From assembly GCA_047495785.1 (NCBI GenBank), contig JBLDXI010000093.1, forward strand, positions 192,422-256,421: a stretch of 64,000 nt of DNA, read 5' to 3'. The position numbers and the translations under genes were made by a program. Positions 41,200-42,562 of this stretch are shown here, one piece after another. This DNA is from Lepidodermella squamata (Eukaryota; Animalia; Gastrotricha). How positions within the stretch are numbered: the first letter of the stretch is position 1; the number at the start of each line of letters is the position of its first letter. The notes under the pieces were generated by a model, which worked only from the letters and a program-made list of their open reading frames with translations, searched no databases and was not told the DNA's origin.

Positions 41200-42562
41200 A
41201 CCTTATCAGCAGAAGGGGCCTCAGCAGATGAGGCTTTGAATTAATCGAAAAGATAACTCTTTATTGATAATACCACCAAACGTTAAGGAAACGCTCTTAA
41301 AGTATACCAGGTTGTAATGTGGCAGAAGGCCTAAGCTAAACTTGTATATTTTTCGAAAAATATCGGCTGATTGATGAGCGCGTATATGGTAAACGCGAAA
41401 CCGGCAAACTAAGAGATAGCGTTCAATTCGGAATTGATACTAACCTCTAACAACCTCAGAAAATTTAATATTCAATCGCAGATATTTACCATAAATTTGC
41501 AAAAATTTTGCCGGTATCCGCCGGTTTTTTTCCAAATCGTTCACTTTTTTGGCCCAAAATCGAGGAGTCCTAAGGCATAGGAACGCGGAAAAATTTCCTA
41601 TGAGTCGATCGAGAAGCGCTGTTCTTAAAGCCGCGGCTGAATGATGAAGGATTCTGAGTAATTCTACAGCCGGAAAATGTCAAATTTCATTGTTCGAAAA
41701 ATTGACCTCGTTAAATTGTCTCGGTTGCGCAACAATGTAACATCTGGCACAATCGAAGTAAACAAATCCCATTGCGTAACACAGTAAGTTGATGGTAAAC
41801 GAGTTCCGCTGTTCTCAGGTGCCATTTTTTGCGTACAATTCGGTTTTTCAAGCGGTTTTTTTTATAGGATAGCAAGGAATAAGCGGGATCGTGTTCGCCT
41901 CGTATTCATCGCCTCGTAATCATCGCCTTTTGTGTAATCGCCTCAAACTCTAACACAGGTACTCTTATGAGACGACAGCGCGTAATATTTATATAAAACG
42001 CTGCTGCAGGAAAAGCATATGCAATTAATGCGGCGCCACTCAGCTCTACTATCGTGAGAGCTGACGGCCGTAAAAGTTGTGCGCTGTGTTATATACTACA
42101 GGGTTTGTCAGTTGTAGATAAGCGAATTTATTCCTTGTCGACACTGCAAATGGCTGCGACTAGTTGGTTATCGTCCGCTCTTAACACAGCGGTCGTGGCA
42201 CACTGAAACGCGCCAGTCAGGTGTATCTAGCATATACTGGTCGATGCGCTATGAAATCCTAATTATACGCACTAGTATAATTTCTCCCGGCCGCTGTCGA
42301 AGCGACTGGTTTTGTAGAGTTGCAATTTGCTGCCGGCTGTCTAAGCCGAAGGCCGCTGTAGAAGTGGCAATTCTTTTGGCTTCCTAAGCCACAGTATAAC
42401 AAGGATGGATGGCAAATATATCGACCGGGAAGTGCGAAATGCAACAGACGGCAAAGTTATTGGTAAAAATATATACCTCTAACCTTGATGCTATGACGTA
42501 AAGCGCTAGTTGCTGTTTTTCTAAAAAACGGCGACAGGCGTCGTAAAGCAACTCGGATTGGT

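What the first reader, a model, noticed from the sequence alone, without database searches (positions are those of the whole stretch)
41404..41465. Element 5' ends mimic the target and rebuild its donor-containing stem
Seen on the + strand: spacer GCATTCTAATAGACAGCAGACGAAGTGGTGATGATACTAAC (3813-3853), X GCAAACTAACAGAAACTCGACGAACGGAAATGATACTAAC (13155-, 18071-), B GCAAACTAAGAGATAGCGTTCAATTCGGAATTGATACTAAC (41404-). The motifs GCA..CTAA.AGA and GG...TGATACTAAC keep similar spacing. On the minus strand B supplies its own GAG|GTTAGTATCAAT, which pairs with the host leader AUUGAAUAUUAA even better than the native sequence. Inference: the element lands just downstream of the host promoter and leader, restores the first ~45 nt of the interrupted gene, is transcribed as a leader-element fusion, and regenerates a target for further insertions (as A did into X).
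Basis: partly seen in the sequence, partly recalled or inferred. Interest (0 to 1): 0.87.

Follow-up and report, generated by a model that had tools for sequence, protein, structure and literature searches.

The report
Jumping genes carrying copied target heads
Two different jumping elements sitting in a small spliced-leader RNA gene of the ribosomal DNA spacer each begin with an old, diverged copy of the first ~40 bases that follow the leader in that gene. That copy re-creates a landing site which a third element has used, but whether it is kept for a purpose is not shown.

Summary
The window is a eukaryotic rDNA array whose spacer carries, on the minus strand, a real spliced-leader (SL) RNA gene. 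In a cDNA-type run the leader sits at the capped 5' end of many contigs.

Element B is an APE-type LINE with a 14-bp target duplication. Element X is an 876-bp non-coding retroposon. Both begin with a sequence similar to the SL gene from the end of the leader to about +41 (p<2e-4; without the shared first 10 nt, p=0.003-0.035). The site pattern is star-like, with private changes on all three branches. The heads are therefore old inherited copies of the target, not convergent mimics or fresh copies.

- **Fusion transcript:** X travels with its own leader variant, and B keeps a relic of the leader's end, so both RNA templates once included the leader. This fits transcription from the SL promoter, but no RNA data cover B or X.
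- **Regenerated target:** LINE A's poly(A) abuts X's head within 2 nt of its position at a native gene.
- **Stem:** B's better stem is real but not beyond chance (23% of random 7-mers match it).

The scan reached the same reading on other pieces of this genome.

The parts
3850..3886 (-). Leader exon of a native, uninterrupted SL RNA gene. Identical copies start at 26601 and 49947.
   Evidence: leader 5' end mapped at the equivalent place 41487; the leader bin is ~4000 times deeper than the spacer beside it.
3813..3853 (-). Native sequence after the leader (start of the SL intron). This is the stretch the element heads resemble.
35039..41451 (-). Element B: APE+RT LINE with ORF1 41199-38716, an ORF2 frame open from about 38755 to 35933, and a poly(G)11 tail at 35039-35049.
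41452..41465 (-). Upstream copy of B's 14-bp target-site duplication (AATTTTCTGAGGTT). The downstream copy is at 35025-35038. It lies inside the end of the leader.
41452..41487 (-). Host leader in front of B.
41404..41451 (-). B's head. 41451-41441 is a relic of the leader end (GTTAGAGGTTA); 41440-41404 is a diverged copy of the intron start. All of it lies inside the duplication, so it belongs to the element.
12319..13194 (-). Element X, full copy: 876 bp, no credible ORF, (TC)n tail, head at 13194-13155.
17452..18110 (-). Second copy of X, first 659 nt only, 100% identical to the full copy, head at 18110-18071. It is followed by a 5-nt filler (17451-17447) and then the truncated A.
18111..18142 (-). 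Leader in front of X: a private variant with 3 substitutions and a 1-nt deletion, all within its last 14 nt. The next 1094 nt upstream are identical to a native unit.
13196..17446 (-). Element A, 5'-truncated APE+RT LINE. Its poly(A) at 13207-13196 abuts GGTTAGT of X's head.
58373..64000 (-). Element A at a native SL gene: poly(A) followed directly by TTAGTATC. Its 5' end lies beyond the window.

Best explanation
X and B each carry, as a heritable part of their 5' end, an old copy of the front of the SL RNA gene they insert into. The copy covers the end of the leader plus about 41 nt of the sequence that follows it. It was captured when an ancestral element RNA was made together with SL gene sequence. 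That could have been read-through from the SL promoter of a copy sitting further inside the gene, or the reverse transcriptase switching template onto SL RNA. The elements insert in the sense orientation at the last nucleotides of the leader. They are most likely transcribed from the SL gene's own start site as leader-head-element RNAs. The leader part of that RNA lets the cDNA end anneal to the target's leader, giving a clean 5' junction. The head stops before the SL RNA's terminal hairpin and 3'-end signals, which would otherwise end transcription. As a by-product, leader plus head re-creates the sequence that donor-site LINEs such as A recognise, so insertions can stack. Shown here: the homology, that the heads belong to the elements, the target duplication, X's private leader, the order X then A, and that the leader is a real SL. 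Inferred: the mode of capture, transcription from the SL start, and why the head ends where it does.
For: Similarity is far beyond chance and confined to the expected places. B's head lies inside the 14-bp duplication, and X's head is present in both X copies, one of them behind A's poly(A), so the heads move with the elements. Over +11 to +43 the native gene has 5 private changes, X has 2 and B has 7, with 4 sites where all three differ. That pattern is divergence from a common source, not a copy of today's gene. X's leader differs from the native one at 4 positions within its last 14 nt, with no difference in the next 1094 nt, so X's RNA template contained a leader. The same junction letters turn up as a loose end in run X2. 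B starts with a relic of the leader end. The SL 5' end at 41487 directly follows template-switch-oligo letters in run X1, and the leader bin is ~4000 times deeper than the spacer beside it. There is no ATG in the 288 nt from that start to B's ORF1 ATG (P=0.006), although an ATG lies 3 nt upstream of the start. A's poly(A) meets X's head within 2 nt of where it meets a native gene, and X's 3' flank still holds TGAGG, which an A-first order would have removed. Transcription from flanking promoters and head addition by template switching are documented for snRNA-headed SINEs (PMC4494074).
Against: No RNA evidence exists for a leader-B or leader-X transcript: run X1 has zero depth over B. An internal promoter cannot be excluded. 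Only one copy of each junction is in the window, and run X2 may be the window's own source. Two B relatives from other organisms show no detectable target copy in their 5' regions, though only 16-18 nt of their targets are known. The conserved-block pattern (two well-kept blocks around a variable middle) could mean selection rather than passive inheritance.
Confidence: 0.6

Rival explanations
1. The heads are kept by selection because they work. They might supply an intragenic part of the SL promoter, an Sm-like site for SL-type cap modification, or a leader/donor stem, so that the fusion RNA is made and handled like an SL-capped message.
For: Two blocks are much better kept than the 18 nt between them. 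Block 2 sits where the second SL module has its Sm-like site just before the terminal hairpin. X's variant leader and B's head both give a stronger leader/donor stem than the native gene. ORF2 of A and B is only 28% identical, and X has no DNA similarity to A or B, so unrelated families carry heads.
Against: With three sequences the block pattern has no statistical weight. B's stem gain is matched by 23% of random sequences, and X's leader change is one-sided, not compensatory. The middle segment has no conserved hairpin. Relatives in other organisms show no such head (low power). No RNA data are available.
Confidence: 0.22
2. The heads are added afresh at each insertion, by template switching from the element RNA onto variant SL RNAs made elsewhere in the genome. 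They would then be chimeric retrocopies like U6-L1, not inherited parts of the elements.
For: A filler with microhomology lies at the A/X joint (GACCC after GACCCGTGCGC), which shows that template jumps or similar events happen at this locus. A variant SL gene intron is seen as a loose end in run X2.
Against: The two X copies have identical heads. The same B junction occurs in run X2 (record 14). The heads differ from every SL gene copy in the window by 20-32%. The X2 variant intron resembles the native gene, not the heads.
Confidence: 0.08
3. The fusion RNA still serves as an SL donor: the head restores enough of the SL RNA for the leader to be trans-spliced, so insertions cost the host little.
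For: A donor-like GTATCA and the block-2 motif are kept at native spacing in both heads.
Against: The terminal hairpin and 3' end of the SL RNA are missing. In B the copy is displaced by 10 nt, so the leader would be longer. Using the donor would cut the leader off the element RNA, which works against the element. No read evidence.
Confidence: 0.07
4. The resemblance is chance, or reflects only the few bases of the target site itself.
For: The first 10 nt overlap the target site of these elements.
Against: The similarity stays significant without the first 10 nt, and block 2 occurs nowhere else in 64 kb.
Confidence: 0.01

Closest known systems
SL-gene-specific non-LTR retrotransposons with a restriction-like endonuclease (CRE1/CRE2, SLACS, CZAR of trypanosomatids; NeSL-1 of nematodes)
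   Same: They insert at a fixed place in spliced-leader RNA genes in the sense orientation. Spliced leader exons are listed as a known target class (PMC4640811). From my own knowledge, not checked here, SLACS RNA starts at the SL gene's +1.
   Different: Those elements encode a restriction-like endonuclease, while A and B encode an APE-type one. They sit inside the leader exon well before its end. I know of no head copied from the SL intron in them.
R1 and R2 of rRNA genes (co-transcribed, site-specific)
   Same: They rely on the host gene's transcription. Host sequence on the RNA helps precise, target-specific integration (cited in PMC4494074). From my own knowledge, R1 also makes a 14-bp target duplication, as B does.
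   Different: Their target is the 28S gene and Pol I transcripts. R2 frees its RNA with a ribozyme. They do not carry a diverged copy of the sequence downstream of their insertion site.
SINEU and other SINEs with small-RNA-derived heads; Tx1-clade LINEs such as Keno that target U2 snRNA genes (PMC4494074)
   Same: Retroposons whose 5' head is a piece of a small nuclear RNA gene, added by template switching or read-through and then inherited. Transcription from upstream flanking promoters has been proposed. Their partner LINEs are APE-type and target-specific.
   Different: Here the head comes from the very gene that is the target, in an autonomous LINE as well as in a non-coding element. The head excludes the RNA's 3' half and re-creates the target.
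U6-L1 chimeric retrocopies
   Same: A small RNA is joined to the 5' end of a LINE cDNA by a template switch.
   Different: Those are dead-end single events. Here the head is part of a propagating family.

Membership tests
APE-type non-LTR retrotransposon (A and B) | ORF2 with an N-terminal apurinic-like endonuclease followed by reverse transcriptase | tested here: met
   Pfam Exo_endo_phos, Exo_endo_phos_2 and RVT_1 match both ORF2s. B's endonuclease N-terminus is present in an open frame.
APE-type non-LTR retrotransposon (A and B) | No LTRs, a 3' homopolymer tail, a target-site duplication, 5' truncation | tested here: met
   B has a poly(G)11 tail and a 14-bp duplication. A has poly(A), and one copy is 5'-truncated.
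APE-type non-LTR retrotransposon (A and B) | Assignment to a named clade (R1, Tx1, Jockey, I and so on) by RT phylogeny | not tested
   No reference set was available. The named distant hits are 'jockey-like'. The closest relatives (49-53% identity) are unnamed contigs.
Spliced-leader RNA gene (the target) | The leader is found at the capped 5' end of many different RNAs | tested here: met
   In run X1 the leader bin has depth ~175,000 against ~40 beside it. The contigs carry unrelated 3' continuations, and template-switch-oligo letters directly precede 41487. Caveat: the run's organism is coded, and its kind as RNA was a guess that I infer from the oligo.
Spliced-leader RNA gene (the target) | GU donor right after the leader, then an Sm site and a 3' hairpin | tested here: inconclusive
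   A donor is present, but its place is ambiguous (GAG|GTTAGT or GGTTA|GTATCA). A 3' hairpin is predicted. The Sm-like site UAUUAG is non-canonical.
Spliced-leader RNA gene (the target) | Match to a curated Rfam SL family | tested here: not met
   No Rfam match at gathering score or at E up to 10. The leader sequence is not in the searchable literature.
RLE-type SL-specific retrotransposons (CRE/SLACS/CZAR, NeSL) | Restriction-like endonuclease downstream of the RT | tested here: not met
   ORF2 has an APE domain at its N-terminus and no RLE hit.
SINE with a small-RNA-derived head (element X) | Short, non-coding, with a head derived from a small RNA gene | tested here: met
   X is 876 bp with only noise ORFs. 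Its head is 80% identical to the SL gene over 41 nt.
SINE with a small-RNA-derived head (element X) | 3' end shared with a partner LINE | tested here: not met
   No DNA similarity between X and A or B in the window. A partner may lie elsewhere in the genome.
Co-transcribed site-specific elements (R1/R2-like mode) | Element RNA starts at the host gene's promoter | not testable with these tools
   Only contig-level runs were on offer, and there is zero RNA depth on B. The support is indirect only.

The most novel reading that the evidence does not exclude
The heads are a selected module shared by unrelated APE-type LINE families and their non-coding passengers. By copying the leader-proximal part of the SL RNA gene, the module would let element RNA be initiated, capped and perhaps translated like an SL-bearing message. 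It would also renew the landing site on a regular basis, so the SL gene array could absorb stacked insertions.
Probability: 0.2. Interest if true: 0.75.

Novelty: new variant of a known kind. Interest (0 to 1): 0.5.

Why it matters
Site-specific retrotransposons that live in multicopy RNA genes show how a parasite can use a host promoter and keep its damage small. Here APE-type LINEs and a non-coding retroposon target a spliced-leader gene. In the papers I could search, only restriction-endonuclease-type elements are reported to do that. They also carry a piece of that gene as their own front end. If the head proves functional, it would be a compact, portable signal for SL-type transcription or RNA handling. 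It would also explain how nested insertions arise at one site. If it is only a relic, it still records that the element RNAs are made together with the leader.

Tried and rejected
- **More copies by exact protein:** looking up A ORF2 and B ORF1 found nothing on record.
- **Word-based protein search with B ORF1:** blank for the whole protein and for the conserved part.
- **Profile search with an ORF1 alignment:** it found relatives. I fetched four 5' regions (L003-L006). Two further contigs had no DNA on offer.
- **Target-like heads in relatives:** L002 gave p=0.50 and L003/L001 gave p=0.92, against p<0.0005 for B as a positive control. I count this as inconclusive because only 16-18 nt of those targets are known.
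- **Metagenome scans:** the leader sequence and ORF1 relatives were both blank.
- **Literature search for the leader sequence:** blank.
- **Rfam on the SL gene, X and the B junction:** nothing.
- **B's leader/head stem as a significant feature:** rejected.
- **Chance similarity:** rejected.
- **Heads as remnants of variant host genes rather than parts of the elements:** rejected, because B's duplication encloses its head and X's head follows A's poly(A).
- **A inserted before X:** rejected, because X's 3' flank keeps TGAGG.
- **Earlier scan notes by sequence:** blank.
- **A's 5' end:** could not be reached. A 30-letter loose end in run X2 that reads like a further head variant has only 0.66 agreement among three contigs, so I did not use it.

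Full report
**What the window is**

Rfam finds seven eukaryotic rDNA units: 18S, 5.8S and 28S on the + strand, and a 5S gene on the minus strand in each spacer. Aligning a native 2153-bp spacer to the window shows three intact spacers and three that are interrupted at one place (native 3851-3864). On the minus strand that place lies in a small gene. Its transcribed start reads AAATATCTGCG, followed by a 33-37 nt leader and a GT donor. A second, paralogous module lies 470 nt downstream.

**The target is a real spliced-leader gene**

Only two public runs held the stretch, both as contigs.
- In run X1 the 100-nt bin holding the leader has summed depth of about 175,000, against about 40 in the spacer next to it.
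- The contigs continue on the 3' side into unrelated sequences.
- On the 5' side they continue into letters that are the reverse complement of a SMART-type template-switch oligo (...TCAACGCAGAGTAC). I identify the oligo from my own knowledge.
- The oligo letters end directly at 41487/41488.

So X1 is cDNA, the leader is at the capped 5' end of many RNAs, and its first base is 41487 (3886 in a native unit).

The listed contigs run on through GAGGTT(G) before they diverge. The second module has AAG|GTATGA, where the first has GGTTA|GTATCA. This does not change the similarity, which starts at GTTAGT either way.

**The inserts (all on the minus strand, the sense of the SL gene)**

- **B (41451 to 35039).** It has ORF1 and an APE+RT ORF2, a poly(G)11 tail and a 14-bp target duplication, AATTTTCTGAGGTT, at 35025-35038 and 41452-41465.
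- **A.** This is a different APE+RT LINE; its ORF2 is 28% identical to B's. It has a poly(A) tail. One copy sits at a native gene from 58373 and runs off the window.
- **Unit 2, read along the minus strand.** It holds a variant leader; X positions 1-659; a 5-nt filler; a 5'-truncated A with poly(A); a complete X (876 bp, non-coding, (TC)n tail); and then the native gene from TGAGG onward.

**The observation**

The four stretches are at the stated coordinates. In 5000 shuffles per pair, none reached the observed alignment score for native-X, native-B or X-B over 45 nt. Without the shared first 10 nt, p is 0.003, 0.035 and 0.007. The second module's intron is not similar. The two motifs are found only in native genes and in the X and B heads: 8 and 9 hits, against 0.27 and 0.03 expected. 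The similarity ends at about +41 to +43, at the 5' arm of the SL RNA's predicted terminal hairpin.

**The heads belong to the elements**

B's head lies inside its target duplication. X's head is present in both X copies, one of which follows A's poly(A) rather than a leader. So they are not leftovers of variant host genes.

**Descent, not convergence**

Over +11 to +43 the three-way alignment gives:

| Site pattern | Sites |
|---|---|
| X and B agree against native | 5 |
| Native and X agree against B | 7 |
| Native and B agree against X | 2 |
| All three differ | 4 |

This is a star with private changes on every branch. The heads are old copies of an SL gene front end, taken from an earlier or different version of the gene. 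They are 80% (X) and 68% (B) identical to today's gene.

**Evidence that the element RNAs include the leader**

1. The leader in front of X differs from all other leaders in the window by three substitutions and one deletion. All four lie within its last 14 nt, while the next 1094 nt upstream are identical to a native unit. Random mutation does not do this. The simplest reading is that X's RNA template carried its own leader, and that the cDNA end joined the target within the leader's first 20 nt by homology. The same junction letters appear as a loose end in run X2, but that run may be the window's own source.
2. B begins with GTTAGAGGTTA, a relic of the leader end TCTGAGGTTA, before its copy of the intron.
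3. The 288 nt from the SL start to B's ORF1 ATG contain no ATG (P=0.006), while an ATG lies 3 nt upstream of the start. This fits scanning from the SL cap, but an internal start at B's first base would fit too.

Direct evidence is missing: run X1 has zero depth on B.

**Regenerated target**

At a native gene A's poly(A) is followed by TTAGTATC (58372/58373). In unit 2 it is followed by GGTTAGTATC of X's head (13195/13196), which is the same place within 2 nt. X's 3' flank still has TGAGG, which an earlier A insertion would have removed, so X came first and A landed on X's head.

The X(1-659) piece upstream of A has two possible origins. Either two X copies were stacked and A's insertion deleted 217 bp of the upstream one, or A's cDNA jumped onto an X transcript. 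The filler GACCC repeats X letters 6 nt upstream. Both need X's head as a target. This is one case only.

**The stem**

B's head pairs better with the leader than the native sequence does, and X's variant leader turns a G-U pair into G-C. But 23% of random 7-nt extensions do as well as B, and X's change is one-sided, so I give this no weight.

**Relatives elsewhere**

B's ORF2 has relatives of 49-53% identity in unnamed contigs. Two of them end in the same way as B: a conserved 3' UTR, AGTTAG, a G run, and then a leader-like end with a GTAT donor. B's habit of targeting such sites is therefore older than this genome. Their 5' regions show no significant copy of their own targets, but only 16-18 nt of each target is known. 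Whether heads are general remains open.

**Comparison with what is known**

- The literature I could search lists spliced leader exons as targets only for elements with restriction-like endonucleases, and names the Tx1 and R1 clades as the APE-type target-specific groups (PMC4640811).
- Heads taken from small nuclear RNA genes, added by template switching and then inherited, and transcription from flanking promoters, are described for SINEU (PMC4494074).
- What differs here: the head comes from the target gene itself, it sits on an autonomous LINE as well as on a non-coding element, and it re-creates the target.

Other follow-ups of this scan reached the same reading on other pieces of this genome. 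I tested it independently here.

**Verdict**

Noticed in passing
window 1-600: The first rDNA unit is aberrant: 1-330 equals 18S positions 154-483, then after 4 nt the sequence continues in the 28S (335-600 equals 8795-9060). About 3.35 kb (rest of 18S, ITS1, 5.8S, ITS2, start of 28S) is missing. This is either a deleted rDNA unit or an assembly joint.
   Followed up: partly
window 3330-3420 (minus strand), repeated in each unit: A second SL-RNA-like module with the same start (ATATCTGCG), a different leader ending in CTAAG|GTATGA, an AAUUUGAG Sm-like site and a hairpin. None of the three inserts in this window is in it.
   Followed up: partly
window 3850-3854 and 41448-41455: cDNA-type contigs carry the leader through GAGGTT(G) before diverging. 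B's duplication then lies wholly inside the leader exon.
   Followed up: partly
window 3709-3741 and 3184-3216: A 33-bp box (GTCGCCAATGACCAYGTGCATGTGG...) occurs twice per spacer at 91% identity, once after each SL module. The second copy lies about 25 nt upstream of the 5S gene. It may be a shared control element.
   Followed up: no
window 35039-35120; L001 6080-6157; L002 5210-5298: B and its 50%-identical relatives share a conserved 3' UTR end (GCAGTGRCGCTG ... GCCAAAT ... AGTTAG) followed by a G run instead of poly(A). This is probably the RNA feature their reverse transcriptase recognises.
   Followed up: partly
window 38452-38755: B's ORF2 frame is open from about 38755 and encodes the endonuclease N-terminus, but the first ATG is at 38452. 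Where relatives have their start codon (38722), B has a Phe codon. Either this copy lost its start, or ORF2 is translated by re-initiation at the ORF1 stop (38716).
   Followed up: partly
window 12480-13100 (X body): X's GC-rich body holds three copies of a GCCGCATYTYGGCG motif, and a strong hairpin followed by AUUUUGG near its head. The function is unknown, and no Rfam match was found.
   Followed up: partly
run X2, loose ends before 41452-41454: Other sequences are joined to the same leader in that data set. One is a variant SL intron (GTTGGTATGAACACC...). Another reads like a further head variant (low agreement). More families or gene variants use this site than the window shows.
   Followed up: no
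window 2862-3000: An imperfect palindrome (76% self-complementary over about 140 bp) lies between the 28S end and the 5S gene in several units.
   Followed up: no
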